Shown one piece after another: positions 34,986 through 56,609 of a stretch of DNA of 64,000 nucleotides (position 1 is the stretch's first letter; the number at the start of each line of letters is the position of its first letter). The stretch comes from Monocercomonoides exilis PA203 (taxonomy: Eukaryota; Protista; Preaxostyla). Position numbers and translations under genes: made by a program. The DNA is taken from positions 2,038,612 to 2,102,611 of the forward strand of contig LSRY02000005.1 in NCBI GenBank assembly GCA_001643675.2. The letters run 5' to 3'. The notes below the pieces were generated by a model. The model had not been told where the DNA came from, did no database searches, and saw nothing but the letters and a program-made list of their open reading frames with translations.

Positions 34986-36038
34986 ATGAGCGTGCTTCAG
35001 CCTGGACTCGAGTCGAGTCTGAATTCCTTATCTCAGGATATCAGCGGACCTCCGAGCAGCGTGGGATTTACGCAATCCACCTCCAGCATATTTTCCTCAT
35101 CAGCCGCTACTATTCCGACACAAAATATTGCAATGGGCCTTGAAAACACATCAAGCCGTGAAGATCACAATGTTACAAACTTGCTCCATCCACCTTTCCA
35201 ACAATCTTCAAGCTCTTCTCAGCCCCAAATATTTCCAGGTCCAACAACACTTGAGCAACACCCAATCAATTCTCCGCAAACGACGCAGCAGCAGAATATT
35301 CTTCAAACGATAGACACTTCGCAAGAACACCTGATGGAGAAAGACAATTATCAACCGAACTTCAAATACATTTGTTTCTCGCTTTTCGGAGATAAAACAA
35401 AGGATTCAATATTCGAAATGCATTTTCCTGAACAAGCAGGCTCAAATCCCACAATTTACTCGAATTTCTCAGCACCTCCGTTTATTCCAGAGGCTATCCA
35501 CCCAATTCAAAGAACATCAAATTGGTGCTACGACGCTCTAGAACAAAATGGATTCAAAATCGAAGAAAAATTGATATCGGCAATAAAAGCGCTTATTATT
35601 GGAAAAGATATGGTAGATAAGGGATTGGACCCAAGTGCAGTTTTGGCTGATTCTTTCTTAATGATGGTTAAAGCACTCCAGGAAGCGAGAACACAAAGGA
35701 TCCAAGCAGTTTATGGATTCAGAGCCGCAAGGACATTGAAAGAAGAAGATGGAGACCAATTGCTTTCCAAGAGGCAACTTGAAACGTTGAAGATCGCTGA
35801 GCCGAAACAAAAATTGCTTCCTCGATCGCAGGGATGGATCAGACCGTACACAAATACATTCTCACTTAAAAACCAGTTTTTTCGGACAAGAAGGATCCCA
35901 TTTACAAGAAGAAAATTCAGTTCAAACAGCAGCAGAAGCTCCCAGAGAACCAGCAGAACTTGGAGCTCCAACAAATGGGATCCTCGAAGAAAGTTGGAGG
36001 AAGAACAAGACTCTTTCTCAAGAACTGGTCCGAAATAG
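34986..36038 (+). CDS. DIRS ORF1 (gag-like)
   Basis: A 350-aa ORF starts immediately after the left ITR. It has a basic C-terminus and overlaps the start of ORF2. Confidence 0.75.
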   Translation: MSVLQPGLESSLNSLSQDISGPPSSVGFTQSTSSIFSSSAATIPTQNIAMGLENTSSREDHNVTNLLHPPFQQSSSSSQPQIFPGPTTLEQHPINSPQTTQQQNILQTIDTSQEHLMEKDNYQPNFKYICFSLFGDKTKDSIFEMHFPEQAGSNPTIYSNFSAPPFIPEAIHPIQRTSNWCYDALEQNGFKIEEKLISAIKALIIGKDMVDKGLDPSAVLADSFLMMVKALQEARTQRIQAVYGFRAARTLKEEDGDQLLSKRQLETLKIAEPKQKLLPRSQGWIRPYTNTFSLKNQFFRTRRIPFTRRKFSSNSSRSSQRTSRTWSSNKWDPRRKLEEEQDSFSRTGPK

Positions 36039-37886
36039 GGGCCAGGAGAATTATAGAGAAGGGAGCTTGTCCTGTTTGGAGAAGCAGAGAGGCACGGGAC
36101 AAGCTGAAAAAGGAAGTCAAAGCAGGACATGGTTTCATTGGATCCCAGGAGCAGGAGAGGGAGTGCGAGAAGTGGATAGCGGAAGCACTGGATTGTGGGA
36201 TATTGAAGAGGATCAAGTTCGAAGATGCAAAATGCCTCAGCAAACTGTTTTTCGTAAAGAAGAAGAACGGGAAATGGAGACAAATATTGGACTGCAGACC
36301 TCTGAACAAAGCCCTGAAATCAATCAAGTTCAAGCTGGAGGATCACAGAACTGTGGAAAAGTTGATGGAAAAGGGAGATTTTGCAACCTCATTGGATCTC
36401 TCTCAAGCATATTTCTTAATCCCTGTTCGCGAAGATTTCATCCCGTTTTTGGCTTTCAAATTTCATCAAGAAACAATAGCGTTTCGATGCCTTCCATTTG
36501 GAATGAAGGATGCCCCAAGAATCTTTACGAAGATCATGCGTTCAATTATAAAGCTGGTGAGAATGAAATGGAAAGTTCGTTGCATCTCTTATCTGGACGA
36601 TGTCCTCTTTTCTTCACAAGGACAAACAGAAGCTGGAGCAAATAACAAAGGAGGTTATGGATTGGTTCTCCCAACTTGGTCTGATGGTCAACAAGGAGAA
36701 AAGCGAACTTCAGGCAAAGCAAAGATTCAACTTTCTGGGATGGAAATGGGATTCGATTCAGTCGACAGTGGCTCTGAACGAAGAGAGAATTGCCTCCATT
36801 GTTCAGAAGTGTCACATGGTACTGATAAACACAATAAAGAGGCGTCCAATCTCAGTCAGAAGATTTGCTTCAATTGTGGGGCAAATAAGCGCTGCCAGAT
36901 TTGTCCACACAGACGCATCATTACACATGACAAACCTTTATCAATGCCTAATGAAGAATGTCAACATCAATGGATGGAACGGACAATGTCGACTTCATTT
37001 TGGAATCATTCCAGAATTGACATTCTGGATAAGCGAAGTCAGGAAGAGAAAACAAAGAACGCTTCAATCCTTTGGCTCCCCTCAGGTGACGATTACAACA
37101 GATGCCTCGCCATGGGCATGCGGAGGAAGTGTAAAGATATCAGGACAACTCAAGAAGATTTTTCACGTCCCTTTGAACAGAGTTGCTCAAAACCAAACGT
37201 CAAACTTCAGGGAATTACTTGCAGTCAAGATTGCGCTAGCAAGGTTTTCTCAGGATATCGCAAAACTGTCGGAAAGGAAGGTGTTGATACGCTCGGACAA
37301 CACATCGGTAGTTTACAACATAAACAGATGGGGAGCAGGAAAGAATCTGCGACCTCTATTGAAAGAGATCAGGAAACTTGTGGAGAGTCAGGGAATCCAG
37401 GTCAAAGCAGTTCATATTGCAGGAAAAAGAAATGTGGAGGCAGATGCCCTGTCAAGACTCGAGCAGTCGGGAGATTACGAAATCAAAAATCAGGCTCTTC
37501 AGATGGCACTCAACTACCTCAGGATCAAACCGACTCTGGATGCGTTTGCAAGTGCAAAGAACAGAAAGCTTCAACGGTGGTGCGGGCCAGGCAGCAGATT
37601 ATGTCAGGACGGTCTGAGCTATCCGTGGAAGGGCGAGGTGGTTCTTGCCCATCCGCCAATTCCACTGATCCTTCAGACGATGAGGAAAGCGTTGAAGGAG
37701 AGAGCGAAGATGATTCTTCTGATACCGGATTGGACGAATCAGATTTGGAGCCAGACCCTTCAACTGTGGAAAAGACGATTCATGAGATGGAGATGTTCAC
37801 GAATGATATTACTACCAGGGCAGGGTCTGAAGGCGAGAGGAGCAGCGCTTCCTCCGGGAGGTTACCTGGCAATAAGCTTTCCCTAG
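35960..37886 (+). CDS. DIRS ORF2: reverse transcriptase - RNase H - DNA adenine methyltransferase-like domain, split by a +1 shift at 36608-36611
   Basis: RT motifs are VGGR, WRQILDCRPLN, LDLSQAY, LPFGMKDAPRIF, YLDD and FNFLG. RNase H motifs are TTDAS, NFRELLAV, RSDNT and NVEADALSR. MT motifs are LDAFAS, HPPIPLI and IPDW. Confidence 0.92.
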
Positions 37887-39475
37887 TCAAGAAGGCAGGT
37901 GAACAGTGGTTTGAGCAGGGCCTACGAAAACTTAATGTTCCGGACAGCATGATAATACACATTAAAAATAGTGTTGCCACGTCAACATGGACAACATACA
38001 CATTTGGATTCGCACATTTCGCAAACGCTTGGATCAAGGGGAATATGGGGGAGTTACCGTCAGATCCTGTGATTTGGGTGAGGAAGTGCTTGGACACTTT
38101 CATATGTTTAGATAATGAGGGTTTTCCTCCTCAGTGCTTAAAGCAAGCAAGGTCCGCAGTGTCGCTATTCACAAGAAGTGCTTTCTCTTTCGATTTAGGA
38201 ACAGTACCGATAATAAAGACATTCTTTCGATCTATCATGAGAAAGGAAAAGAAAAGAGCTCCGTACGAGGAAATATGGGATCCACAGGTCCTTTTCAATT
38301 ATCTCCGAACTCTGTGGCCCAACGAGACTTTGAGCGTATACTCTCTGACATTGAAATCAATAACTCTGTGTATGTTATTCACTGCATGCATGTTTTCAGA
38401 ACTGGCGAGCATTTCAATGAACGATTCGATAATCTCTGAGAATGCAATTCATCTCTCAGTCCAATTGAAAACAAGACTCGCAAGATCGTTCATCACAGTC
38501 CCTAAACTGAAGGAGATCCAGTCAGATGTTTGTCCAGTTCGTGCAATATTGGAACTTTGGAACCAAATTAAAGTTTTGTATCCAGGAAGAGACACGTTCA
38601 TAATAAACACGAGAACCGGATCAAGAATGTCAAAGGATGGAATTCGTAAACTCGCAAAGGAGGCAATGAAGCAGGCAGGAATCAACCCCTCGTTTCGGCC
38701 TTCCACTATAAAGCATGCAGCTTTGTCTGCTCTCCTTGCCGCTGGAGTTCCGGAGGTTATGGTAGCACACTTTGCCAGATTGTCTCCCACAGCTCACACA
38801 CCAACTAATTCTGACTTCAAAACAAACACTGCTCAAGCGATGGCCCAGGTTCTGACAGAGCACCAACCATTCCCACAAACGGGGTCTCAAATACAACCTT
38901 GGAGTGCACAAATAACTCAAGGATCTTCTTTTGCAAACATCCAAGCTCCAAACCAATCTGCAATTATCGTGTTTCCTGTTCAACATGATATGGCCCTTTC
39001 ACCTCAACCACATCCTTCGCAACTGTATCAACAACAACCTCAGACGTTTAATTTTCAGCCCTCCTCTCAGTATTTTCAAAGCCAGCAACCTTCAAATACA
39101 ATTGGATTATCGCTGGCGCAACCACAAACTTTTAATTCCCCACAACTATCTTTACAGGCAAATTGTTCCATTCCAACACAACAGCTTCCCTCTCTCACAG
39201 AACAGAGCATTGACATGGACATCGAAGAGTCGCAATCATCGCAGACCGTTGGAGAGGAGAAGGATATCAATAAGGAAAATGAAGAAGTCAAAGAAGTTGA
39301 AGATAAACTGCACAATAAGGAAAACATTTGCATTGATCAGGAAGAGGATTCGAAGCGATCATGTTCCCATTCAACTGTCAAGAAATCAAGAAATATTTGC
39401 ACACGAACAGAGAGAGTGGTAACAAGAGCCTACGCAATATTAATGGAACAGGAGACACAAAACATGCCCAATTAA
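36067..39475 (+). CDS. DIRS ORF3: tyrosine recombinase (domain ~37900-38850) with a long N-terminal part overlapping ORF2
   Basis: Motifs are STWTTY, ARSAVS, YEEIWDP, LTLKSITL..LFTAC.FSEL, KT, CPVRAI, AGI..FRPSTIKHA and a Q-rich tail. The frame is continuous with ORF 36067-36645 once the extra T at 36608-36611 is removed. Confidence 0.85.
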
Positions 39476-40003: not shown

Positions 40004-41436
40004 CTAGTTGTAGTCTGAAATTTTTGTTGATAATTCATAGCCATATTCACTGTTAAGAAAGTCAAATATTCCATGAAAGCTTGTAATGACATCTTCATAT
40101 CCTTCTTCTTCCATCTTTCCAAATGACTCCATTTTGGTTGCTTTTCTTTTCGCTTCCACTTTTTCATCTTTCTCTTTTATTTTCAATCGCTTCGAAACAT
40201 TCGTAAAAAATAGTAAGTATTCATACGCCATCTTATCATCCAATGTTGGTCTCTGTATCTCCTCCAAATAGAGTCCAATAGTTCCGCTTTCCAAAAAGTT
40301 ATCAGTTTTCACGTCTTTATTTTCTGCTGCTTCTCTTAACGAATAAAGGCATTGTAATTGAATTCCAAAGCAATTATCTCTTGATGCTCTATACACTTGA
40401 GAAATACTTCTGATAAGCCCAGAATATTCTTCATTCCACGATCTGCAATTGCGAAAATAAATTTCCAACATTTCGAACCATCTCATCAAAACAATCTCAT
40501 CTTCAGTTTCTTTTCCTCTTTCTTCTTTTCTCTTCCAATCCATACACTTTGAAAGATCTTCCAGTTCTTTTGCAGCTTCCCTCACAAAATGTAGTTCATT
40601 CACAATCACTTCTGTAAAGCTTTCATCATTATAAGATCTGTATATCAAAAACTTCCAAGCAGACTGATAGGCAAGTCGAGTCAAGTTGTGATGTTCCCGG
40701 CGATATTTAATGATTTCTTTGATTTCATTCAAATACAGTTTTTGTTCAATAAACTAATAAAAAAAAGAGGAAAAATTCATTCACATAAAAAATAAAATTG
40801 AAATGTTCATACATCATTTTCATCAATGCAGCTCAAAGCCAGCAAACTCATCTCCATTTCTTTCTGAACTTTCTTGCTTTCCTCTTTCTTCGAAGCAATC
40901 TTCAGAAGACATGGCACAACGATTGAAAGAATTTCATCAAAAATGTCATCATCACCCAGCAAAGCAAAACATTCACAAAGATCAGTTAAAAGCTTTTCAT
41001 CTTTTTTCTTCTCATTTTCATCAATTATCATCTCTTTCATACTTTCTCTCAATGATGAATAATCAAAAGAATAGCATATGAAGCATTTCAATTCCTTGTA
41101 ATATCCAACATGCTTCAACAGCAAAATTGCATTTTCCATCGAAATCATCATTTCTTCAATCATTCTGTTGATCGTATCGAACAGTTCTATTGTGAAAATT
41201 GATCTGAATTCTTCTTCACTCATTTCCTCAACCATTCCGTTCATTTCAAGGATTGTATGCTTTTGTTCAATTTCATTGTAGTGTTCCAGCTCACGAAGCA
41301 ATTCTTCCAAAATTATCGAAACATGTCAAATAAAGTTCTTTCAAACAATAGATTAAATTCACAAACTTGAAAACTTCTCTGCAAGTGATGGCTCCTGAAC
41401 ATCATCATTGGATTTAGCTTCATCACACATTTTCAT
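40004..41436 (-). CDS. Member of a lineage-specific helical multigene family (two short introns)
   Basis: Exons encode AEKFS / ELEHYNEIEQK..VPCLLKIASKKEES..EMSLLALSCI / LYLNEIKEIIKY..HHNLTRLAYQSAW..KMEEEGYEDVITSFH. A decayed paralog is visible at 56610-57770. Confidence 0.75.
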
Positions 41437-44048: not shown

Positions 44049-46892
44049 TTATTCAAATAAAGGCGATGCAATATTTGTTTCTGTCATAAATCCTTTCATA
44101 TTCGCTGCTAATTCATTTCCTTGCAGTCCTTCTTCATTTAACACAGAAGAAGAAGACAAAATCTGATTCACAGCTTCTTCAATGAATTCACTACTTATTC
44201 CTTCCTTCTTCCTTTTTTTTTCTAAATGTTCTATTGATTCATTAATACCATGTGTTGTATTGTTCAAATGTTGAATGGAAGATGCATTTTCATTTGAATT
44301 CGAATTCGCTTCTTTCTCATCATTTTTTCCTGTTCTATTTTCTTCTTCTTCTCCTCCTCCTCCTTCTTTTCCTTCACATTCATTTTCTTCCTCCTCCACA
44401 TGTATCTGCTGCTTCTTTGAGAATATTTTCTTCTTCTTCTTCGTCGTCATCACAATCAAAATGACACAAACAACTGCTACAACTGCCACAACACCAACAA
44501 CAATCACAATAATCCACCAAGCAAATGGCTTATCTTTTTCTCCATTTCCTTCTCTTCCTTCTGATTCCTTCTCTTCTTTTGATTCGTCTTCCTTCTGCTT
44601 ATCTTCCTTCCTCTTCAAATACTTTTCATATGCATCTTCTGGCTCTGATTCTTTATTTTTTGCTCCCACAATCCATCCAACTGTCGAATCATCGTAATCA
44701 TTCGCAAATTCGAATGCACCTTCCTGTTTGCAGAACTCATCTAAATCAGGTGCAACGATGAATAGAGAAGTTGATTTTGAACCAGCTGTATTTGAGCTGT
44801 CTATCTCCAGATTGTTTGCTGATGGAAGCTGAAGATTTGGTGTTATCTTTGTCATCCAAATGTATATTGCCCCAACTTTCCCATTCGGTGCTGAACAAGA
44901 TTTGAATGAGCATTTGTCGTTTCTTCCAATCGCGACTGTTGATTCTTCTGAACTCAAAGAAATCTCCAAGCCAGCCACATCTCCATTCTCTGAGTTCACT
45001 TCCTTTATGCTCAGTCCTTCAATGCAAACTGTTGAAGGTGTGCTTTCTCCATCTTTAATAACAATCGCTGCTCCATTTTTGACATTCACATTGCTCATCT
45101 CCACTCCATTCAATGAAATTTCACTGACACCTTCAAAATAAAATGGGGAAATTGAAAATGAAACACAAATTGAATCATCTGCACATGAAACATTGACCAT
45201 CGAAACTTTCCCACTTAAAACGCTCACAAGTCTACCTTCAACAGAACCGTTTCCATCAACACATGTGACAATTCCTCCTTCTGATGATATAACTCTAATT
45301 CTGACAAATCGGCAATTGCTGATCGTGAGTGATGCTGATCTTTCATTTCCAAAAATCAAATAATTCCATTTTTTTTCAGAAGTGGGAAAGTTGAATGCCA
45401 AAGACTTGAATTCCACCTCTTTTTCACATGTAAATAAAGCATTTGAAGCGCTAACAGCACAATCAATAGCCACTTCAACATTTCCATTTCCATCGCTGTT
45501 CACTCCTTCAATGGTAATTCCCTTTTCGTTGCTAATTGTCATTTCTTCTGCTGTAAACTGGCTTTCATCTATTACAATCTCTATGAAGTATCCTTCAGAA
45601 GATAGAATTCCATTTAGTTCACTGAATGCTCCTTTCAATGAACTCAATGGTGAATTGCTTGTCCATCCGTCTCCTGTTCCTTTGTTCTTCAAATATATCT
45701 TTCCGGTTTGATCTAAATACATGGAAACAAAATCGTAAAATTTGACTGTTCCATCAATACATGCTGCAACATTCCACAAATTGTCATTCCGAGTATAATC
45801 TGCTGCAAAACTCTTCTTCATTGCTGATGCGATATCTTCGAACAATGAGTCATTCGTCATTATCAATAATAGGCCAGTGTCTCTTTTTGATTTACCTTCT
45901 CCGACTGTGCATTTGTCAAATATCAGATTCCTTCCATCTTCAGGCCAGTTAAGCTGATTTGCTGATTTAATAGCTTTCATTCGTAGACATAATGCAGAGC
46001 TATATTCAAAATCAGTATGGAATGATGAAAAAGTTGTGACACCTCCATCTCCAACAGCAAATGTGCTTTCTTCGTTACCAGTTTTGAAAGCCAAAGCCAT
46101 ACGAAAGCCGTTTATCTCCGAAAAAGTGCTCCCATTCAATTTAAGATCGGTTTTGATTTTTTCGTTTGAGCTGTAGATATCGACAACGGCTTCTGAAAAA
46201 ATATCATCATTTGGATCATCAATTAAATCAATTTTCTTCAAAGTCAAATTGGATAATATCACCGTTTCGCAATCACTTGCAAAAAACACTTCTCTCTTCG
46301 TTGTAAATGTATTTTCTTCATCTGTACATTCAACTGATTCCATCGTCAATGATCCTTGATATTGGTAAACAAGTCTACAATCAACCACGCTTCCGTCTGC
46401 TGGTCGAATAAATCTACAGTTGCTTATTGTCAAGCTTGTACGTTGTGCGTCTATAACAGACAACGAATATACATCTGGAACAACATCTTTCTCCAATGTT
46501 GTTGGAATGTGAAATGCCAAGTATTTGAATTCCGTAGGACAATGGCAATTAAATAGATCTATTCCTTTATGCACTTCACAGTCTATTTCCACTTCAGTGT
46601 TTCCACTTCCATCACTTTTCCATCCTTCAAGCGTAACTCTTGTCTTTTTACTGACTGTAAAAACTTCCGCAGGAAATGGTTTTGCATCTTCAACAACTTT
46701 AATGTAGCATGTGCAATCGTCGCTTAGGAGTAAGCTTGCAAGAGTGAAAGTTTGCATTTCCTCGCCAATCTCCAAACCACTGTTGCTATCGTTCCCGCTA
46801 TGCTTAACAAACACTGTTGTAATTGGCTGTGATGAATCGTCTAGCAAGTAAACCGATATTACGATTTGCACAAAAATTAATCCCCAGAACAT
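44049..46892 (-). CDS. Type I membrane/surface protein with two tandem beta-helix-like modules
   Basis: There is an N-terminal hydrophobic signal, duplicated motifs (EGWKSDGSGNTEVEIDC / EGVNSDGNGNVEVAIDC; SLTISNCRFIR / SLTISNCRFVR), and a TM segment WWIIVIVVGVVAVVAVVCVILIV followed by KKKKK. Confidence 0.85.
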   Translation of the reverse strand: MFWGLIFVQIVISVYLLDDSSQPITTVFVKHSGNDSNSGLEIGEEMQTFTLASLLLSDDCTCYIKVVEDAKPFPAEVFTVSKKTRVTLEGWKSDGSGNTEVEIDCEVHKGIDLFNCHCPTEFKYLAFHIPTTLEKDVVPDVYSLSVIDAQRTSLTISNCRFIRPADGSVVDCRLVYQYQGSLTMESVECTDEENTFTTKREVFFASDCETVILSNLTLKKIDLIDDPNDDIFSEAVVDIYSSNEKIKTDLKLNGSTFSEINGFRMALAFKTGNEESTFAVGDGGVTTFSSFHTDFEYSSALCLRMKAIKSANQLNWPEDGRNLIFDKCTVGEGKSKRDTGLLLIMTNDSLFEDIASAMKKSFAADYTRNDNLWNVAACIDGTVKFYDFVSMYLDQTGKIYLKNKGTGDGWTSNSPLSSLKGAFSELNGILSSEGYFIEIVIDESQFTAEEMTISNEKGITIEGVNSDGNGNVEVAIDCAVSASNALFTCEKEVEFKSLAFNFPTSEKKWNYLIFGNERSASLTISNCRFVRIRVISSEGGIVTCVDGNGSVEGRLVSVLSGKVSMVNVSCADDSICVSFSISPFYFEGVSEISLNGVEMSNVNVKNGAAIVIKDGESTPSTVCIEGLSIKEVNSENGDVAGLEISLSSEESTVAIGRNDKCSFKSCSAPNGKVGAIYIWMTKITPNLQLPSANNLEIDSSNTAGSKSTSLFIVAPDLDEFCKQEGAFEFANDYDDSTVGWIVGAKNKESEPEDAYEKYLKRKEDKQKEDESKEEKESEGREGNGEKDKPFAWWIIVIVVGVVAVVAVVCVILIVMTTKKKKKIFSKKQQIHVEEEENECEGKEGGGGEEEENRTGKNDEKEANSNSNENASSIQHLNNTTHGINESIEHLEKKRKKEGISSEFIEEAVNQILSSSSVLNEEGLQGNELAANMKGFMTETNIASPLFE

Positions 46893-47468
46893 TCTTCAAA
46901 TAACACTTATTTAAATTTTTTATTTTGATCAATGCTTATATAAAATGTAAATTGATAGTCTTAATTAGTTTTTGAGAGATTTTAAAAAAGAAACATCTTC
47001 TTGTTCATTTCATGAACTACTTTCATTAATTGATGTGTATGTCATTTTTTTGAATAAAAATTTCTGAACGAACATCCATTATATTCTTTTGTTCATCGAT
47101 TTATAAAAGAATTCGATGTTTAAGGAAATAACTGAAATGAGTCTTTAAAGAATTTTGAAATAGTCAATTTGTTAGTGTTGAAACAAGCCCTGGGTGACGT
47201 GGTGACTTCTGACGTGCACTTTTCGATTTTTGACGGACGTGATGCACATTTTCACGTTATAAGAAATAATCATTGAATAATTAAAGTGTTTTTTTTAATT
47301 TAAAATTTTTTTGAAAACACTGTTTGTTTTTTAAAAAACAATAATATAAAAATTTTCGAAAATTTTTTTTTAACAAATTATGCATAATTATTTTTTTCTG
47401 ACGCAAAAGCCAAAATCGGAATTTTGAAACGTCACTGAAGTCATTGACGTCACGTCAAGTCACATTAA

Positions 47469-50461
47469 ATGTTAGAGTTGGAAGAAGACCTGGAAAATGA
47501 AAACTTACAAAAGGAATTACAAGAGTGTTTAAGAAACGTTTTTATTGTTTGCTCACATCTCACAACATTTCTCACATAAGGGTTACCATTTTATTTGTTA
47601 GAAAGATATTTACGAAAAGGCAAAAAAGAAAATGCGTGACACAGATAGTCAATTTGTGAAATTACATAAACACTGTGAAACAAAATTTGGACAAGGTTTG
47701 TTAACTTTTTTATGATTTTCAAGGAATTATATTTTTTGTGTTTTTCTTAATAATGAGTGTATGATCATCCTCGGAAAAAAAATGAATTTCTTTCTCGACT
47801 TTCGTTTTAAGTTATTGGCGAATCATTGTGGATAACTTATTCTCTTGTTGACGAAAACGGAATTCCAAAAAAGGATTGTCACAAATATTATCTATGTCCA
47901 AATGCAAAGGATGGATTTACTTGCGGGATATCTGGCAGAAGAAGTTATTCTGTGGATGCAAAACACGACTGTGAATTGATGAAATACAAAAGCATTGCGC
48001 GATGCAAAAAGATTCCTGATCAAGATTTATCTTTCAATGATACAAAATTGTTTTCAAAAATTGATGGTTCTTTTTATGCGCAAGAATTACAAAAACAGTT
48101 TATTTCTATGATATGTCGATGCAATTCTTCGTTTTTGTCATCTTCTTCGAAAGAAATGAATAATTTTATTTCTTCACTAATAAGAGCTGGCCAAAATTGT
48201 CCTTCGCTTTCATCAACATCAATATTCCCATATTTGACTCGAAAGATAATTACACACATGGTGCTCAAAGAAAAAACTCAAATCGTAAAGGTAAAACAGT
48301 CTAGCATTAGGAACAATGGAGTGAGTTTAATGTTGGATGGTGCATGTGTTGGTAATCGAAAAATTACTGTTGTGACAATCTCAAAATTATCATTGGACAG
48401 AAAGCCCATGTTTTGGGGATTATATCCTCCATGTGGAACTTCAAACGAATATGAGTCACTTGTTAAAAGTTTAATTATAGAATTATCTCAGTTCAATACG
48501 GTTATCAGGAGTTATTGCACCGATGGATTGTTATCTTAGAAAAGAGCCATTGAGAATTTATCTACACAATTCAGCAATGAAAAGACACCTGTTGAGAAAC
48601 ATCCTTCATTTATTCCCTTTCATGTTTATTGCTGCAATCACTTGACAAATTTGATAATCACTAATTTATTAACCAAAATCCCATTTCTTTGTGATCTCAA
48701 ATTAAGAATGCTGAATTTTTCTCAAAAGGCCCATACTCGGCCAATGAAAAACCTTCTGAAGAAGCATGCGCCCACTTTTGTCTCAACAAGATGGCTTTCT
48801 CTGTTTAACATTTCTTCATTCATCAGAAAGAAAAATCAAATCATTCAAAAGGAAAATTTTATAGACACGGATAGCCTTGTGGATATCATCAAAGCAGAAG
48901 CATTTTTACTCCCTTTTCATTTGCTTTATATGCACTTTGAAAATGATAACACCAAGTTGAGCCATGTTTTCCCTATTTTGTTAAAAGTTTTTGAGCTTTT
49001 TTTCTATTTATTAAAGCAAGATCCTTTAAGAGAAGATAAATGGAGAAATTCTATCACTAACGCTTTAATATTGATGTATAATTATTTTTTTTTGTTGGAA
49101 CGCGTGGAGAGTTCATAGTGCTTTCATATGCTGTGACGCCAAACGCTGTTCAACTTGTTCGAAAACAACTCTTTCCTCTCAGGAAATTTTCTTCTTCTTC
49201 ATTTTTAGAAAAAGAAACAGAAACATCTATCCAATCATCCTCAACTTATTCTTCAGAATCCAGACAGATCGCCTCATCTTTATTTCATCCTTTACCGTAT
49301 CCTGTCGATTTTCACACAAATGAGTTATTTTTGTTTTTATATTTCTTCTTCTTTAAATTTTTTTCTCATTGTTTTTTTATATTTTGTTTTTTACAGGATA
49401 GATGATGAATGCCAATTCCCGTATGCATTTTTGAACAAATCAAAAACTCATACAGGCTTGATAACACTTTTTTCTGAGAATGATAAATATTATTTTGATT
49501 CTATTCATATTATTAGAAGGAAAAAACGAATTGCAAGATATCCTTTCATTGATAAAACAATTAGAAGAAGATGATCAAGAAAAAATGAGAATAGAAATGA
49601 AAAAATATTTGATATCGATGAAGATGATGACGAAAGCGATGATTATGGATTATTGGAAGCTGAAGAAAATTCTGTTGATGATATGTATGATTTTTTGTTT
49701 GGACAGTGCAATTCAAGCCAAACTCAATTCGAAAAAGAAAATGAACAATATTCAACGACTGACGTTTCATCAAATGCATCTTTTTCCTCTTCCTCGACAA
49801 TATCAATTATTGATCATGATTCAACTTTCTCATCATGCATGACTACACAAGAAACAATGAATACATCGCATGGGGAAATGATGGATATTGATAAGGATAT
49901 TGATGATTGCCAGAAGAATCAAATCATTAATATGGAAGATGACATCCATAGTGAAGATCATAGGAAAATTGAAGGGCTTCATTCAGGAATCGAAGGGGAA
50001 AAAATGTGGAAATGGAAGAATTATTTTCCACAAGCAAATTTACTATTGTAACTGAATACAATGAAGAAAAGAAAATCCAGAGTATCAAACAAATTGAAAA
50101 TGCATTATTTGTCGATTGATTTCCAAGGCTTGATGCATATTTTGCTAAATATTCTAAAACAGTCATAAGAGGAATGGAAAAAGAATATTCTGAAAACTGC
50201 AGACTGTTATTTGAAAGACAGATGAGATCGAAACCTGAAGATTTACATCGAAACGATCCTGAAATTTATTGTCGAGTGTTGGCAGCATATGGAGATATTC
50301 AAACTGTTTATTCAGGATTATGCCTTTCATTAATTTTTTCTCCCTGTAGTGAAGCCAGTTGTGAACGGATCATTTCCAGGATGAAAAATATTACCGGAGA
50401 TCAAAGATATTCATTCAATATTCAGACGCTTGAAGCAATACTTCATATTAAACCTGTGTGA
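47469..50461 (+). pseudogene. hAT transposase, intron-containing, disrupted
   Basis: Motifs are LMLDG (D1), YCTDG (D2), YCCNHLTNL (CxxH), STRWLS and SPCSEASCERIISRMK (E plus dimerisation domain). There is an in-frame TAG at 48537-48539, a TGA near 50117, and several homopolymer frameshifts. Confidence 0.88.
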
Positions 50462-50513
50462 CGTGATGAAATTTTTGTCTTCACGTCAGTCAGTGAATTT
50501 TGGTCACGTCAGT

Positions 50514-50551
<38 letters not shown>

Positions 50552-54431: not shown

Positions 54432-56609
54432 CTTCATATTTAAATCGTGTTTGCTTTTTCATGTTTTTCGCTTCATTTTTATCGAAATATTTTCTTTTTA
54501 TAATATAATTTTTGAACCAGACGTGTCTGCTTTATTAAATAGATGTTTTATTCTAAAACATGTTAATTAATATAAATTGAACAATCAACCAGAAATTAAA
54601 AAACGGTGAATCGAAGTGAAAAAAATAGGATGACATAAAAATGATAATGATAGTTTAATATTGACGAAATCGAATGAAAATAGATGCGCTTTTTATAAGT
54701 AAATCGTTTCATAGAAACAAAAAATTGTTTATGTGGATCAATGAGGGAAAGCAACTTAAAGAGTATATTAAATGGAAAATGTGCGTTATTCATTTTTCTG
54801 ATCGTTGTTCAATGCTAATGAAATCTATAATTTGATTTCTTATTGGATGGCCATGTGGAAGGAGACTATTTAATTTCGTATTTGAAATGGCAGCTTTTCG
54901 AAAGTTGCTCTTGGTTCAAGAAAACAGAAGAAATAGAAAATTTCGTTCAAGTTTATAATGAAATGAGATAAATAATTCCCGTCATCAAATGGGATAAAAA
55001 GTTTACAATATTTTTGGATTTCGTCATCATTTTCTTCTTCATTCAGATTAAATTCTTATTTAATGCAAAGTGTATTTTCTTGAAATTTTGTATTCATGAG
55101 AAATCTTCTTCTTGTGATGAAAAATTTTCCATTTTTCATCTCAAAAGGAATAAAGTTGATAGTAATGAGATTTTTGCTGCAATTAAAAGCACTCCTTAAA
55201 AACGCCGTTGCTTTGAACGCTTCATTTGAAACATATGAAACAATTAAATTTCAATTTTTGACTTATACATATGCATCAAACTCGATTTATGATTTTTATT
55301 CATCAACAACAAGAAATGATAGCTTTTTATCCTCTGCTTCGCTTTCATTAATACGCGAAGTTGATTAGAAAGAGATCGAAGAAGAAATAACAAAAAAGAC
55401 TGATAGAGAAGCGACGTGAAACTCTCAATAAGCACAAAAGCGAGACCCGAATGTATCTCTTGAGCCAAAAGAATTATGAGATGCTTTGTGAGGTGGTTTT
55501 TGCTCAATTGATTGTATTGATGGGTTGAACAAGACATGAGTACATGCAAGATGTGAAAGATGGTTTTCACAGCAACTTGAGATGGTGCACAAGTAGCTCA
55601 CGAAGAACCACACAACGCGAACTGAGAACATTTTTCAGCCTCAAATCCAATTGAATTTTGAAAAAAAAGAGTTCTGAATGAATAATGAAAGTTGAACATC
55701 AGCGCTGCTGACCTTGTCTTTTTGCGGAATAAAAGGCATTCCATGCGAGCTGGAGGAACAGAAGCAGGATTTTTGGGTCTGCAGTCAGTTTCAATAAAGA
55801 TTGAAATAAGAAATATATCTTGAAATTAATGATTAGAGGTTATTGCTGTGAAATAGTTTAATTATTTGAATTTGCATTTTATGAAAGAAATTTGTTGAAG
55901 AACATGAAATGCATCAATCTCAACTTTATCACTGGTGAATTTTGTTTCATAAAAATTAGCAAAAAAGATTTGATTGATAAAGCATTTGTTTTCACATTTG
56001 TTTCTTTATATGAATCAATGTTTTCATCTTTTTCCTTTTCTCAGTTTTCCACTGTTCATAAGTTTCCGTCACATTATGCGATTGTTCTCTTATGAAATTG
56101 AGAAATAATCGCTTTGTGCAAATAATTTCACTTCATCCATTCGAAAAAGAAATAAAATCAGATAATGTGATTGATAAAGAAAGCCATCATCTGAAAAAAA
56201 TGCATTTTAGAAGTTTTGTTGTGAAACAGCATTGCATTTTGATTTTTCTTTGAAGTTGTTTCTGTGGGCTTATAATTTGAAGAAGATAAGTGAAGAAAAA
56301 ATAAAGAAAATTACTGAAACACAAGTATTATCTATTATTTGATATAATTTGCAACATCTCATTTGATTGTTTAATTAATATTCTTCGTTTTAATGTTTTA
56401 ATTTCGCATTATTTCTAATAGTTGAAAAAGAAATGTTAACGAAAAAAACTTCAACAAATTTTTTGTTCTCGACTTTAAGAAATGAAGAGAAAAGAAAAAT
56501 TGGCACGTTGGAACTTCTCGAAAATTAAATACGAGCTCTTTTTTTTTATAAATATTCTGAAAATAAAAATCAATACTCAATTCCTGTGAATTCAAAAAAT
56601 TGAACAAGA

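What the first reader, a model, noticed from the sequence alone, without database searches (positions are those of the whole stretch)
50441..54439. Nested Pack-hAT: a sister element inserted into the last codons of the transposase, carrying a host surface-protein gene
Seen: a second TIR pair (TAAACCTG.GTGACGT) has TSD CTTCATAT, and excising it restores the transposase end ..LEAILHI-TAA. Its ends align with the outer element's ends in reverse orientation (shared TGACGTG, TGACGGAC, GGAATTT..CGTC and CAAGTCA..AAATGTT blocks). It has no recognisable transposase but contains ~1.9 kb of a GGA-motif surface-protein gene, plus unidentified coding-like sequence on the minus strand at ~53350-54110. Inference: a Pack-MULE-like gene-capture system built on hAT ends operates in this protist.
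Basis: partly seen in the sequence, partly recalled or inferred. Interest (0 to 1): 0.85.

Follow-up and report, generated by a model that had tools for sequence, protein, structure and literature searches.

The report
Nested gene-carrying hAT transposon, oxymonad
This is a 4-kb transposase-less hAT "cut-and-paste" transposon of the protist Monocercomonoides exilis, inserted in the last codons of a related transposon's transposase gene; it carries an old 1.7-kb piece of the cell's largest receptor-kinase gene family, and that piece has since been reshuffled by recombination.

Summary
Window 50449-54431 is a 3,983-bp element with 16-bp TIRs (TAAACCTG[T/A]GTGACGT) and an 8-bp TSD, CTTCATAT. Two sister copies of the outer element run uninterrupted through the same site (empty sites). 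A sister transposase ends ...LEALLHI*.

The genome is Monocercomonoides exilis. The outer element spans 47185-58264 and is a decayed hAT; a profile of its transposase family hits Hermes at 3e-12. The inner element has no transposase. It shares only its termini with 8.3-kb autonomous elements, in reverse orientation.

Its cargo (about 51084-52779) is a fragment of the ectodomain of a giant receptor-kinase family, not a whole gene. At least 15 TIR-bounded copies, each with its own TSD, carry the same cargo at the same junctions. This points to one old capture followed by mobilisation, some of it very recent (copies 99.8% identical).

A second element type carries a fragment of another gene family. 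The Pack-hAT reading is therefore supported, but the kind is already known from plants and fungi.

One addition: among sister copies the backbone is 94-97% identical, while the 5' half of the cargo is only 72-82% identical, mosaic and polyphyletic. This implies ectopic recombination with paralogs.

The minus-strand "coding" region is not supported. Notes s1-471169 and s1-471135 of this scan reached the same reading on other copies.

The parts
50441..50448 (.). Left copy of the 8-bp target-site duplication CTTCATAT (codons L-H-I of the outer transposase)
   Evidence: The empty sites in L058 and L059 carry a single copy.
50449..50464 (+). Left TIR of the inner element, TAAACCTGTGTGACGT
50449..50513 (+). 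Left subterminal region with CACGTCA/TGACGTG motifs, followed by a T35 run and (TA)n. It is homologous to the right (3') end of the autonomous L015-type element.
   Evidence: inner 1-65 against L015 8310-8246, 81.5%
50550..51083 (.). Left internal backbone, an element-specific sequence of unknown origin
   Evidence: found in 9 further places, 7 of them at 90-95% identity, all at or next to TAAACCTG-type element copies; no similarity to the autonomous element.
51084..52779 (+). Cargo: a 1.70-kb fragment of the ectodomain of the receptor-like protein (tyrosine) kinase gene family. Its 5' half is mosaic and hypervariable. The host frame has an early TAA stop.
   Evidence: host paralogs match inner 636/645-2321/2336 at 80-85%; 81% aa identity to MONOS_2308, residues 10-429; junctions and the TAA stop; mosaic
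51516..52994 (+). Longest ORF (492 aa). About 420 residues are host-derived (MPSDAQFLF...), followed by a 65-residue tail encoded by the backbone.
   Evidence: The start matches the annotated start of several MONOS gene models.
52780..54124 (.). Right internal backbone: element-specific, with no evidence of coding
   Evidence: the long matches all coincide with element copies fetched or TIR hits; no host-gene locus like those of the cargo; no codon periodicity, no conserved ORF; no transposase signal; no Rfam family
54125..54431 (-). Right subterminal region. It is homologous to the left (5') 300 bp of the outer and autonomous elements, so the inner element lies in reverse orientation.
   Evidence: (I1)
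54416..54431 (-). Right TIR, TAAACCTGAGTGACGT when read on the minus strand
54432..54439 (.). Right copy of the TSD CTTCATAT
47185..58264 (+). Outer hAT element, 11,080 bp (7,089 bp without the insert). TIRs are AAGCCCTGGGTGACGT and TAGCCCTGGGTGACGT(rc). The TSD GTTGAAAC lies at 47177-47184 and 58265-58272.
   Evidence: A second copy on C1 is 94-95% identical.
47811..50448 (+). Decayed transposase gene of the outer element, in 5 pieces across two frames. Its last codon is completed by the first base of the inner TIR, and the reading frame then runs on as KPV-stop.
   Evidence: family HMM positions 12-744; stops inside; ORF 50174-50461 ends ...LEAILHIKPV

Best explanation
What it is. Window 50449-54431 is a non-autonomous, Pack-type hAT transposon of Monocercomonoides exilis.

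Structure. It keeps only the ends of its family: a 16-bp TIR, about 65 bp of the 3' end and about 300 bp of the 5' subterminal region with GACG/CGTC repeats. It is presumably moved in trans by the transposase of the 8.3-kb autonomous elements that have the same TIR (the L015 type). That step is inferred.

The insertion. It inserted into the sequence CTTCATAT at the last codons of the already decaying transposase gene of a sister hAT family, making an 8-bp duplication.

The cargo. Its interior is foreign. It holds a 1.7-kb fragment of the ectodomain of the giant receptor-kinase gene family, flanked by two backbone segments of untraceable origin. The fragment was captured once, because all element lineages share the same junctions. 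It was then spread by transposition, and some copies are 99.8% identical at different sites.

Later recombination. After capture the cargo did not simply decay. It has been recombined with other element copies and with chromosomal paralogs, by ectopic gene conversion or by template switching during repair of excision gaps. As a result, sister copies with near-identical backbones carry cargos as different as unrelated paralogs. The mechanism is inferred; the pattern is shown.
For: - TIR, TSD and empty sites.
- hAT membership: a 22-sequence profile of the transposase family hits Hermes at 3.3e-12. The homologues P0057 and P0073 carry PF05699 above its gathering score. The invariant positions include two Asp, two C-terminal Glu in the SEASCER block, a C..H pair and a near-invariant Trp, which I read as the hAT pattern. 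All 20 elements scored have perfect 8-bp TSDs, with T at position 2 in 15 of 20.
- No transposase in the inner element. It shares only its termini with L015, L016 and L053.
- Cargo identity.
- Independent insertions of cargo-bearing copies, each with its own TSD: L001-L008, L012, L020, L044.
- Shared junctions.
- Recent mobility: L006 against L007 is 99.8% identical over 3,469 bp, with different TSDs and unrelated flanks.
- Recombination: the backbone is 94-97% identical against 72-82% for the 5' half of the cargo in all six pairs of the four sister copies (Fisher p 1e-11 to 1e-24), while host paralogs have a median of 75%. There are sharp switches: the window copy against L008 is 97% over inner 650-1047 and then 74% (p 1e-21). 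L001 at 830-927 is 95% identical to the host paralog L024 but 63% to the window copy. On the tree the element cargos are polyphyletic among host paralogs, with at least 4 forced changes.
Against: - No donor above 87% identity exists anywhere in the assembly for the window copy's cargo at inner 1072-1672. Either the exchanges are not recent, or the tracts are short, or the donors were lost or have themselves been converted.
- The direction of exchange (host to element or element to host) is not established.
- Only 27 of several hundred host paralogs were sampled.
- Trans-mobilisation by the L015-type transposase rests only on shared termini. The L015 gene is split over two reading frames.
- No read data could be obtained, so expression, excision and the assembly of this copy could not be checked independently.
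Confidence: 0.85

Rival explanations
1. A single capture followed by ordinary neutral decay, with no recombination. On this view the differences between cargos are point mutations accumulated since the copies separated.
For: All lineages share the junctions. Many copies carry stops or deletions in the cargo. No close donor was found for part of the window copy.
Against: Within the same copies the backbone is 94-97% identical while the 5' half of the cargo is 72-82% identical (p down to 1e-24). Identity switches abruptly along the cargo. The cargos of sister copies fall in different host clades.
Confidence: 0.04
2. Repeated independent captures: each copy, or small group of copies, acquired its own paralog fragment.
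For: The cargos are polyphyletic among host paralogs.
Against: The left and right junctions are the same in subfamilies that differ by 22-30% in their backbone. The mosaic blocks are shared between element lineages, for example the window copy and L006-L008 at 97% over 400 bp. Replacement guided by homology explains the identical junctions; fresh capture does not.
Confidence: 0.06
3. The cargo is kept because it is useful. It could be an expressed truncated ectodomain, or a mobile donor cassette for diversifying the receptor family. On this view it is more than a passenger.
For: Long open frames persist in the host frame in several copies (526-618 codons in L001-L003). The ORF begins at the Met used as start in several annotated gene models and has 430 bp of host-like upstream sequence. 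The cargo is retained across element lineages that are 22-30% diverged.
Against: The window copy and L002, L003 and L006 share an early TAA stop in the host frame. Other copies carry deletions of the cargo (L013, L014, L056). Open frames can be refreshed by conversion without any selection. No expression data were available.
Confidence: 0.1
4. The mosaic is an assembly or polishing artefact in a highly repeated gene family.
For: The assembly is based on nanopore reads (PMC8767320). The family has hundreds of paralogs.
Against: Differences of 20-40% over hundreds of bases are far beyond polishing errors. The blocks recur in several independent copies, for example L006, L007 and L008 at three loci. 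The elements are 4 kb long, well within the length of a read.
Confidence: 0.03

Closest known systems
Pack-TYPE transposons, in particular the Pack-hAT elements of maize (Gisby & Catoni 2022, PMC8903248), and Pack-MULEs
   Same: Non-autonomous TIR element with the 8-bp TSD of its superfamily and no transposase. The interior holds fragments of host genes. Several mobilised copies exist.
   Different: The host is a metamonad protist, not a plant. One old capture is shared by a whole, diversified element family. The cargo comes from a gene family with hundreds of members and has been reshuffled by recombination with it. That paper does not contain the term 'gene conversion'.
hAT transduplication in fungi (Pyrenophora tritici-repentis, PMC3538342; amplification of a housekeeping gene, PMC6710886)
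   Same: hAT-type elements that picked up and amplified host coding sequence.
   Different: Titles and abstracts only were seen. Here the cargo is a fragment of a receptor ectodomain, and the element is nested in a sister transposase gene.
Ac/Ds, hobo and Hermes-type autonomous and non-autonomous hAT pairs
   Same: Short TIRs, an 8-bp TSD, subterminal repeated hexamers, a DDE transposase with a C-terminal hAT dimerisation region, and defective elements that keep only the ends. Local hops also occur: L006/L007 lie 21 kb apart and L010/L055 lie 1.8 kb apart.
   Different: Classic Ds elements are internal deletions of Ac. Here the whole interior is unrelated to the autonomous element.
Other copies of the same family noted by this scan (s1-471169, s1-471135)
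   Same: Same element family, same cargo and same reading, including 'patched by sequence exchange'. A second element type carries a fragment of another expanded gene family.
   Different: This copy is the one nested in the last codons of a sister transposase. Paralogous empty sites are shown for it here.

Membership tests
hAT superfamily | 8-bp target-site duplication | tested here: met
   Inner element CTTCATAT, outer element GTTGAAAC. In all, 20 elements have perfect 8-bp TSDs.
hAT superfamily | Short terminal inverted repeats | tested here: met
   16-bp TIRs matching at 15/16. There are 162 genomic hits against 7 for the control.
hAT superfamily | Transposase homologous to known hAT transposases (DDE core and C-terminal hAT dimerisation region), in the autonomous partner or outer element | tested here: met
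   The family profile A1 hits Hermes (6dww, 4d1q, 2bw3) at E 3e-12 to 9e-11. P0057 and P0073 carry PF05699 above its gathering score. L015 and the outer C-terminus hit PF05699 just below it (19.9 and 15.6 bits against 21.4).
hAT superfamily | Target preference nTnnnnAn | tested here: inconclusive
   T at position 2 in 15 of 20 (p 2e-4). A at position 7 in only 10 of 20 (p 0.10).
Pack-TYPE (gene-carrying non-autonomous TIR element) | No transposase coding capacity | tested here: met
   The family HMM finds nothing in the six frames of the inner element, L006 or L010, but does find the L015 and outer transposases. tblastx gives only termini and low-complexity matches.
Pack-TYPE (gene-carrying non-autonomous TIR element) | The interior contains sequence derived from host genes that are not transposon genes | tested here: met
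   1.70 kb at 80-85% DNA identity to many chromosomal paralogs. The encoded protein is 81% identical to MONOS_2308. The host paralogs remain homologous to each other beyond both junctions.
Pack-TYPE (gene-carrying non-autonomous TIR element) | Mobilised together with its cargo (several copies, each with its own TSD) | tested here: met
   Four full-length copies, at least 10 variants and a sister subfamily, all with different TSDs. L006 and L007 are 99.8% identical with unrelated flanks.
Pack-TYPE (gene-carrying non-autonomous TIR element) | Capture at the DNA level (introns or non-coding host sequence retained) | tested here: inconclusive
   The host genes have no intron in the captured stretch (open frames of over 1,400 codons). 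The cargo is colinear with genomic DNA, but that does not discriminate.
Pack-TYPE (gene-carrying non-autonomous TIR element) | Transcription of the cargo or chimeric transcripts | not testable with these tools

The most novel reading that the evidence does not exclude
The cargos of this Pack-hAT family are active members of the gene-conversion network of the receptor-kinase family, the largest in M. exilis, acting as donors as well as recipients. Transposition would then scatter conversion templates across chromosomes, so a transposon would help to diversify the ectodomains of a surface-receptor repertoire. This would resemble mobile versions of the silent cassettes used in antigenic variation.
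Probability: 0.2. Interest if true: 0.7.

Novelty: new member of a known kind. Interest (0 to 1): 0.45.

Why it matters
- It gives a fully documented case of transposon gene capture outside plants, fungi and animals, in an oxymonad whose repeats are mostly unclassified (35% of the assembly, PMC8767320). The case includes TIRs, TSD, paralogous empty sites, an autonomous partner and near-identical recent copies.
- It shows that this hAT family has been mobile very recently.
- It explains part of the overlap between 'unclassified repeats' and kinase genes noted by the genome's authors.
- The contrast between backbone and cargo is a clean natural experiment on ectopic recombination. The backbone dates the copies, and the cargo shows how fast a sequence with hundreds of paralogs is overwritten.
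- For annotation, ORFs such as 51516-52994 are transposon cargo and should not be counted as receptor genes.

Tried and rejected
- Pfam on the cargo ORF, the host ORF and single transposase pieces gave nothing above threshold. hAT membership needed a family profile.
- The search for homologous proteins with the 925-aa transposase found nothing. My guess is that transposon genes were masked before gene prediction.
- The idea that the right internal part (53350-54110, minus strand) is a remnant of the transposase N-terminus or another gene was rejected. There is no codon periodicity, no conserved ORF, no HMM hit and no match to L015.
- The search for a recent donor of the window copy's cargo found nothing above 87%.
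- The 'private allele' test for mosaicism was uninformative, because 83% of the columns vary.
- The AlphaFold model of the cargo ORF had mean pLDDT 37 and was not used; no fold search was run.
- Rfam gave no hit in 47000-58400.
The empty sites were read from loci returned instead.
- Cargo as an independent insertion with its own ends was rejected. There are no TIRs or TSD at its junctions, and the host paralogs continue beyond both junctions.
Full report
**Organism and context.** The window is C47:2038612-2102611 of an 82.3-Mb, 101-contig assembly. Proteins encoded by relatives of the cargo are annotated as Monocercomonoides exilis MONOS_xxxx. This fits the nanopore assembly described in PMC8767320. 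That paper reports 4.5% classified DNA transposons and 35% unclassified repeats, which overlap the very large 'protein tyrosine kinase' family. I found no description of gene-carrying hAT elements for this organism.

**The observation.**
- The element spans 50449-54431 (3,983 bp).
- Its ends are TAAACCTGTGTGACGT and, in reverse complement, TAAACCTGAGTGACGT.
- Both ends are flanked by CTTCATAT.
- The TIR core is far above chance in the window (4 occurrences against 0.17 expected) and in the genome (162 against 7 for the control).
- ORF 50174-50461 reads ...QTLEAILHI-KPV-stop. The last Ile codon is completed by the first base of the TIR, so the insertion adds three residues.
- The intact sister transposase in L015 ends ...QTLEALLHI-stop and is 60% identical over the last 90 residues.
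- Direct proof of insertion comes from two other copies of the outer element, on C1 and C22. They are 95% and 92% identical and are continuous across the site, reading ...GAAGCAATACTTCATAT|TTAAATCG... with one CTTCATAT.

**The outer element.**
- It spans 47185-58264, with TIRs AAGCCCTGGGTGACGT and TAGCCCTGGGTGACGT(rc) and the TSD GTTGAAAC.
- Its transposase gene is broken into five pieces over two frames, which together cover positions 12-744 of the 754-position family profile.
- The 3.8 kb after the gene belongs to the same element family. The C1 copy matches it at 94%. Part of it (about 56650-57530) resembles many other loci at 66-73%. I did not follow this up.

**hAT membership.**
- Single sequences gave only sub-threshold hits to PF05699 and DUF659.
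- A search of 1.8 billion representative proteins with an intact 925-aa relative (L052) found 168 homologues. Two of them carry PF05699 above its gathering score.
- A 22-sequence alignment has invariant positions that include two Asp, two C-terminal Glu in the SEASCER block, a C..H pair and a near-invariant Trp. I read this as the hAT pattern.
- The profile of that alignment hits Hermes transposase at 3e-12.
- All 20 scored elements have perfect 8-bp TSDs, with T at position 2 in 15 of 20.

**What the inner element keeps of a hAT.**
- Only the ends remain. About 65 bp at the left match the right end of the 8.3-kb elements L015, L016 and L053. About 55 bp at 91-93%, and structurally about 300 bp, at the right match their left end.
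- L015, L016 and L053 have the same TIR and their own TSDs, are 92-98% identical to each other, and encode the transposase (family profile positions 4-745, in two frames). They are the likely autonomous partner. This is inferred.
- The inner element itself gives no transposase signal.

**The cargo.**
- Inner positions 636/645 to 2321/2336 (window about 51084-52779) match dozens of chromosomal loci at 80-85%, many of them in arrays on C25. The first-look searches reported 400-700 candidate loci.
- The encoded protein is 81% identical to residues 10-429 of MONOS_2308.
- Family members are 2,100-2,400 aa long, with one strong TM helix at about 1700-2090. Four of the five members found also carry a precomputed or confirmed C-terminal kinase domain.
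- In several paralogs the open frame extends about 1 kb upstream, to a Met followed by a signal-peptide-like sequence. Several annotated gene models instead start at the Met that corresponds to 51516.
- Either way the cargo is a 5'-proximal fragment of the ectodomain, without the TM or kinase parts.
- Host paralogs stay similar to each other about 100 bp upstream and at least 300 bp downstream of the cargo, where the elements are unrelated to them. These positions are therefore true capture breakpoints.
- There are no TIRs or TSD at the junctions.
- The window copy has a TAA stop in the host frame about 60 bp into the cargo, shared with L002, L003 and L006.

**Other copies.**
- Full-length copies: L001, L002 and L003 (85-87% identical overall).
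- Sister subfamily at 76-79%: L004, L005, L020, L041, L042 and L044.
- Variants sharing the left part and cargo: L006-L008, L012 and L045-L047.
- Deletion derivatives: L013, L014 and L056.
- One copy with nested insertions: L009.
- Every complete copy has its own TSD.
- The backbone/cargo junctions are the same in all lineages that retain them. This indicates one capture that predates the divergence of the family.
- Mobility is recent. L006 and L007 are 99.8% identical over 3,469 bp, with different TSDs and unrelated flanks, and lie 21 kb apart. L010 and L055 are 99.86% identical.

**A second cargo.** L010, L011, L054 and L055 have the same TIRs and are 3.3-3.5 kb long. They carry about 1.1 kb that is 65-72% identical to another very large family (1,205 candidate loci). 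One member of that family lies at window 40004-41310 on the minus strand. At least 219 annotated 'uncharacterized' MONOS proteins belong to it. The family therefore does carry more than one kind of host-derived cargo.

**The unexpected part: backbone against cargo.**
- Among the four full-length sister copies, the internal backbone next to the cargo is 94-97% identical. The 5' half of the cargo is 72-82% identical, no better than host paralogs are to each other (median 75%). This holds in all six pairs, with Fisher p from 1e-11 to 1e-24.
- Identity switches abruptly along the cargo. The window copy is 97% identical to L006-L008 over inner 650-1047 and 74% after 1167. L002 and L003 are 95% identical up to 927 and 74% after 1047. 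L001 at 830-927 is 95% identical to the chromosomal paralog L024 but 63% to the window copy.
- On a maximum-likelihood tree the element cargos fall in at least four places among host paralogs.
- Point mutation cannot produce this pattern. Recombination with other element copies and with chromosomal paralogs can.
- Repair of the double-strand gap left by hAT excision, with template switching between homologous sequences, is a plausible route. This is an inference from what is known of cut-and-paste transposons, not a result obtained here.
- Caveats. For inner 1072-1672 of the window copy, the best match anywhere in the assembly is 86-87%, so no recent donor is identified. The direction of exchange is unknown.

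**Rest of the interior.**
- The left backbone (50550-51083) occurs at or next to TAAACCTG-type element copies only.
- The long matches of the right backbone (52780-54124) all coincide with element copies or TIR hits.
- Neither matches the autonomous element.
- On the minus strand of the right part, substitutions across ten copies show no third-position excess, and no ORF is conserved. The 'coding-like' reading is not supported.

**Comparison and verdict.**
- The anatomy matches Pack-TYPE elements, of which Pack-hAT are described in maize (PMC8903248). hAT transduplication is also reported in fungi (abstracts only).
- This is therefore a new member of a known kind, in a new eukaryotic lineage. 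Its distinctive feature is a recombining cargo.
- Two earlier notes of this scan on other copies in the same genome (s1-471169, s1-471135) reached the same reading. I arrived at mine before seeing them, and I tested the claims here.

**Not done.** Read-level checks were not possible. Further genome fetching was not possible either.

Noticed in passing
window 60001-64000: GC skew is +0.88 to +1.0 (almost no C on the plus strand) over the last 4 kb, and the window ends at the end of contig C47. This looks like a telomeric or subtelomeric G-strand repeat. Another note of the scan covers it.
   Followed up: no
window 35960-39475 (+): A 1,171-aa ORF with a reverse-transcriptase domain (PF00078, 8e-19) and a tyrosine-recombinase domain (PF00589, 3e-7). 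It is a DIRS-like retroelement.
   Followed up: partly
window 40004-41310 (-): Two ORFs (242 and 167 aa) belong to a very large M. exilis-specific family of 250-425-aa 'uncharacterized' proteins, with at least 219 annotated members. A fragment of this family is the cargo of the L010-type hAT elements.
   Followed up: partly
L017/L018 (C25:1517000-1533308) and other C25 loci: Contig C25 holds arrays of receptor-ectodomain units. Many have open frames of only 750-780 codons and no start codon at the frame's beginning. L017 and L018 form a 99.9% identical inverted duplication. They could be pseudogene or cassette arrays.
   Followed up: no
window 56650-57530 (inside the outer element): Part of the 3' region of the outer element is 66-73% similar to many dispersed loci. 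The outer, transposase-bearing element may therefore carry foreign sequence as well. Scan note s1-465032 covers this.
   Followed up: partly
window 51068-51090: In subfamily 1 the backbone/cargo junction reads ...CTTCATTTTTCAG|ACAT..., which resembles a splice acceptor. No RNA data were available to test it.
   Followed up: no
L015:2860-2960: The transposase of the best autonomous copy continues in another frame across an A-rich stretch. This is either a real frameshift or a nanopore homopolymer error. Only 2 of the 6 closest copies have no stop inside the match.
   Followed up: partly
L011 and L054 (C62:205835 and C62:222447): These two element copies have the same TSD, GTAACAAC, and are 99.3% identical. 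This pair arose by segmental duplication, not by transposition.
   Followed up: partly
window 44049-46892 (-): A 947-aa ORF with one TM segment and an acidic or lysine-rich tail lies directly left of the outer element. It has repeated 'EGxxSDGxGNxEVxIDC' modules and no Pfam family.
   Followed up: no
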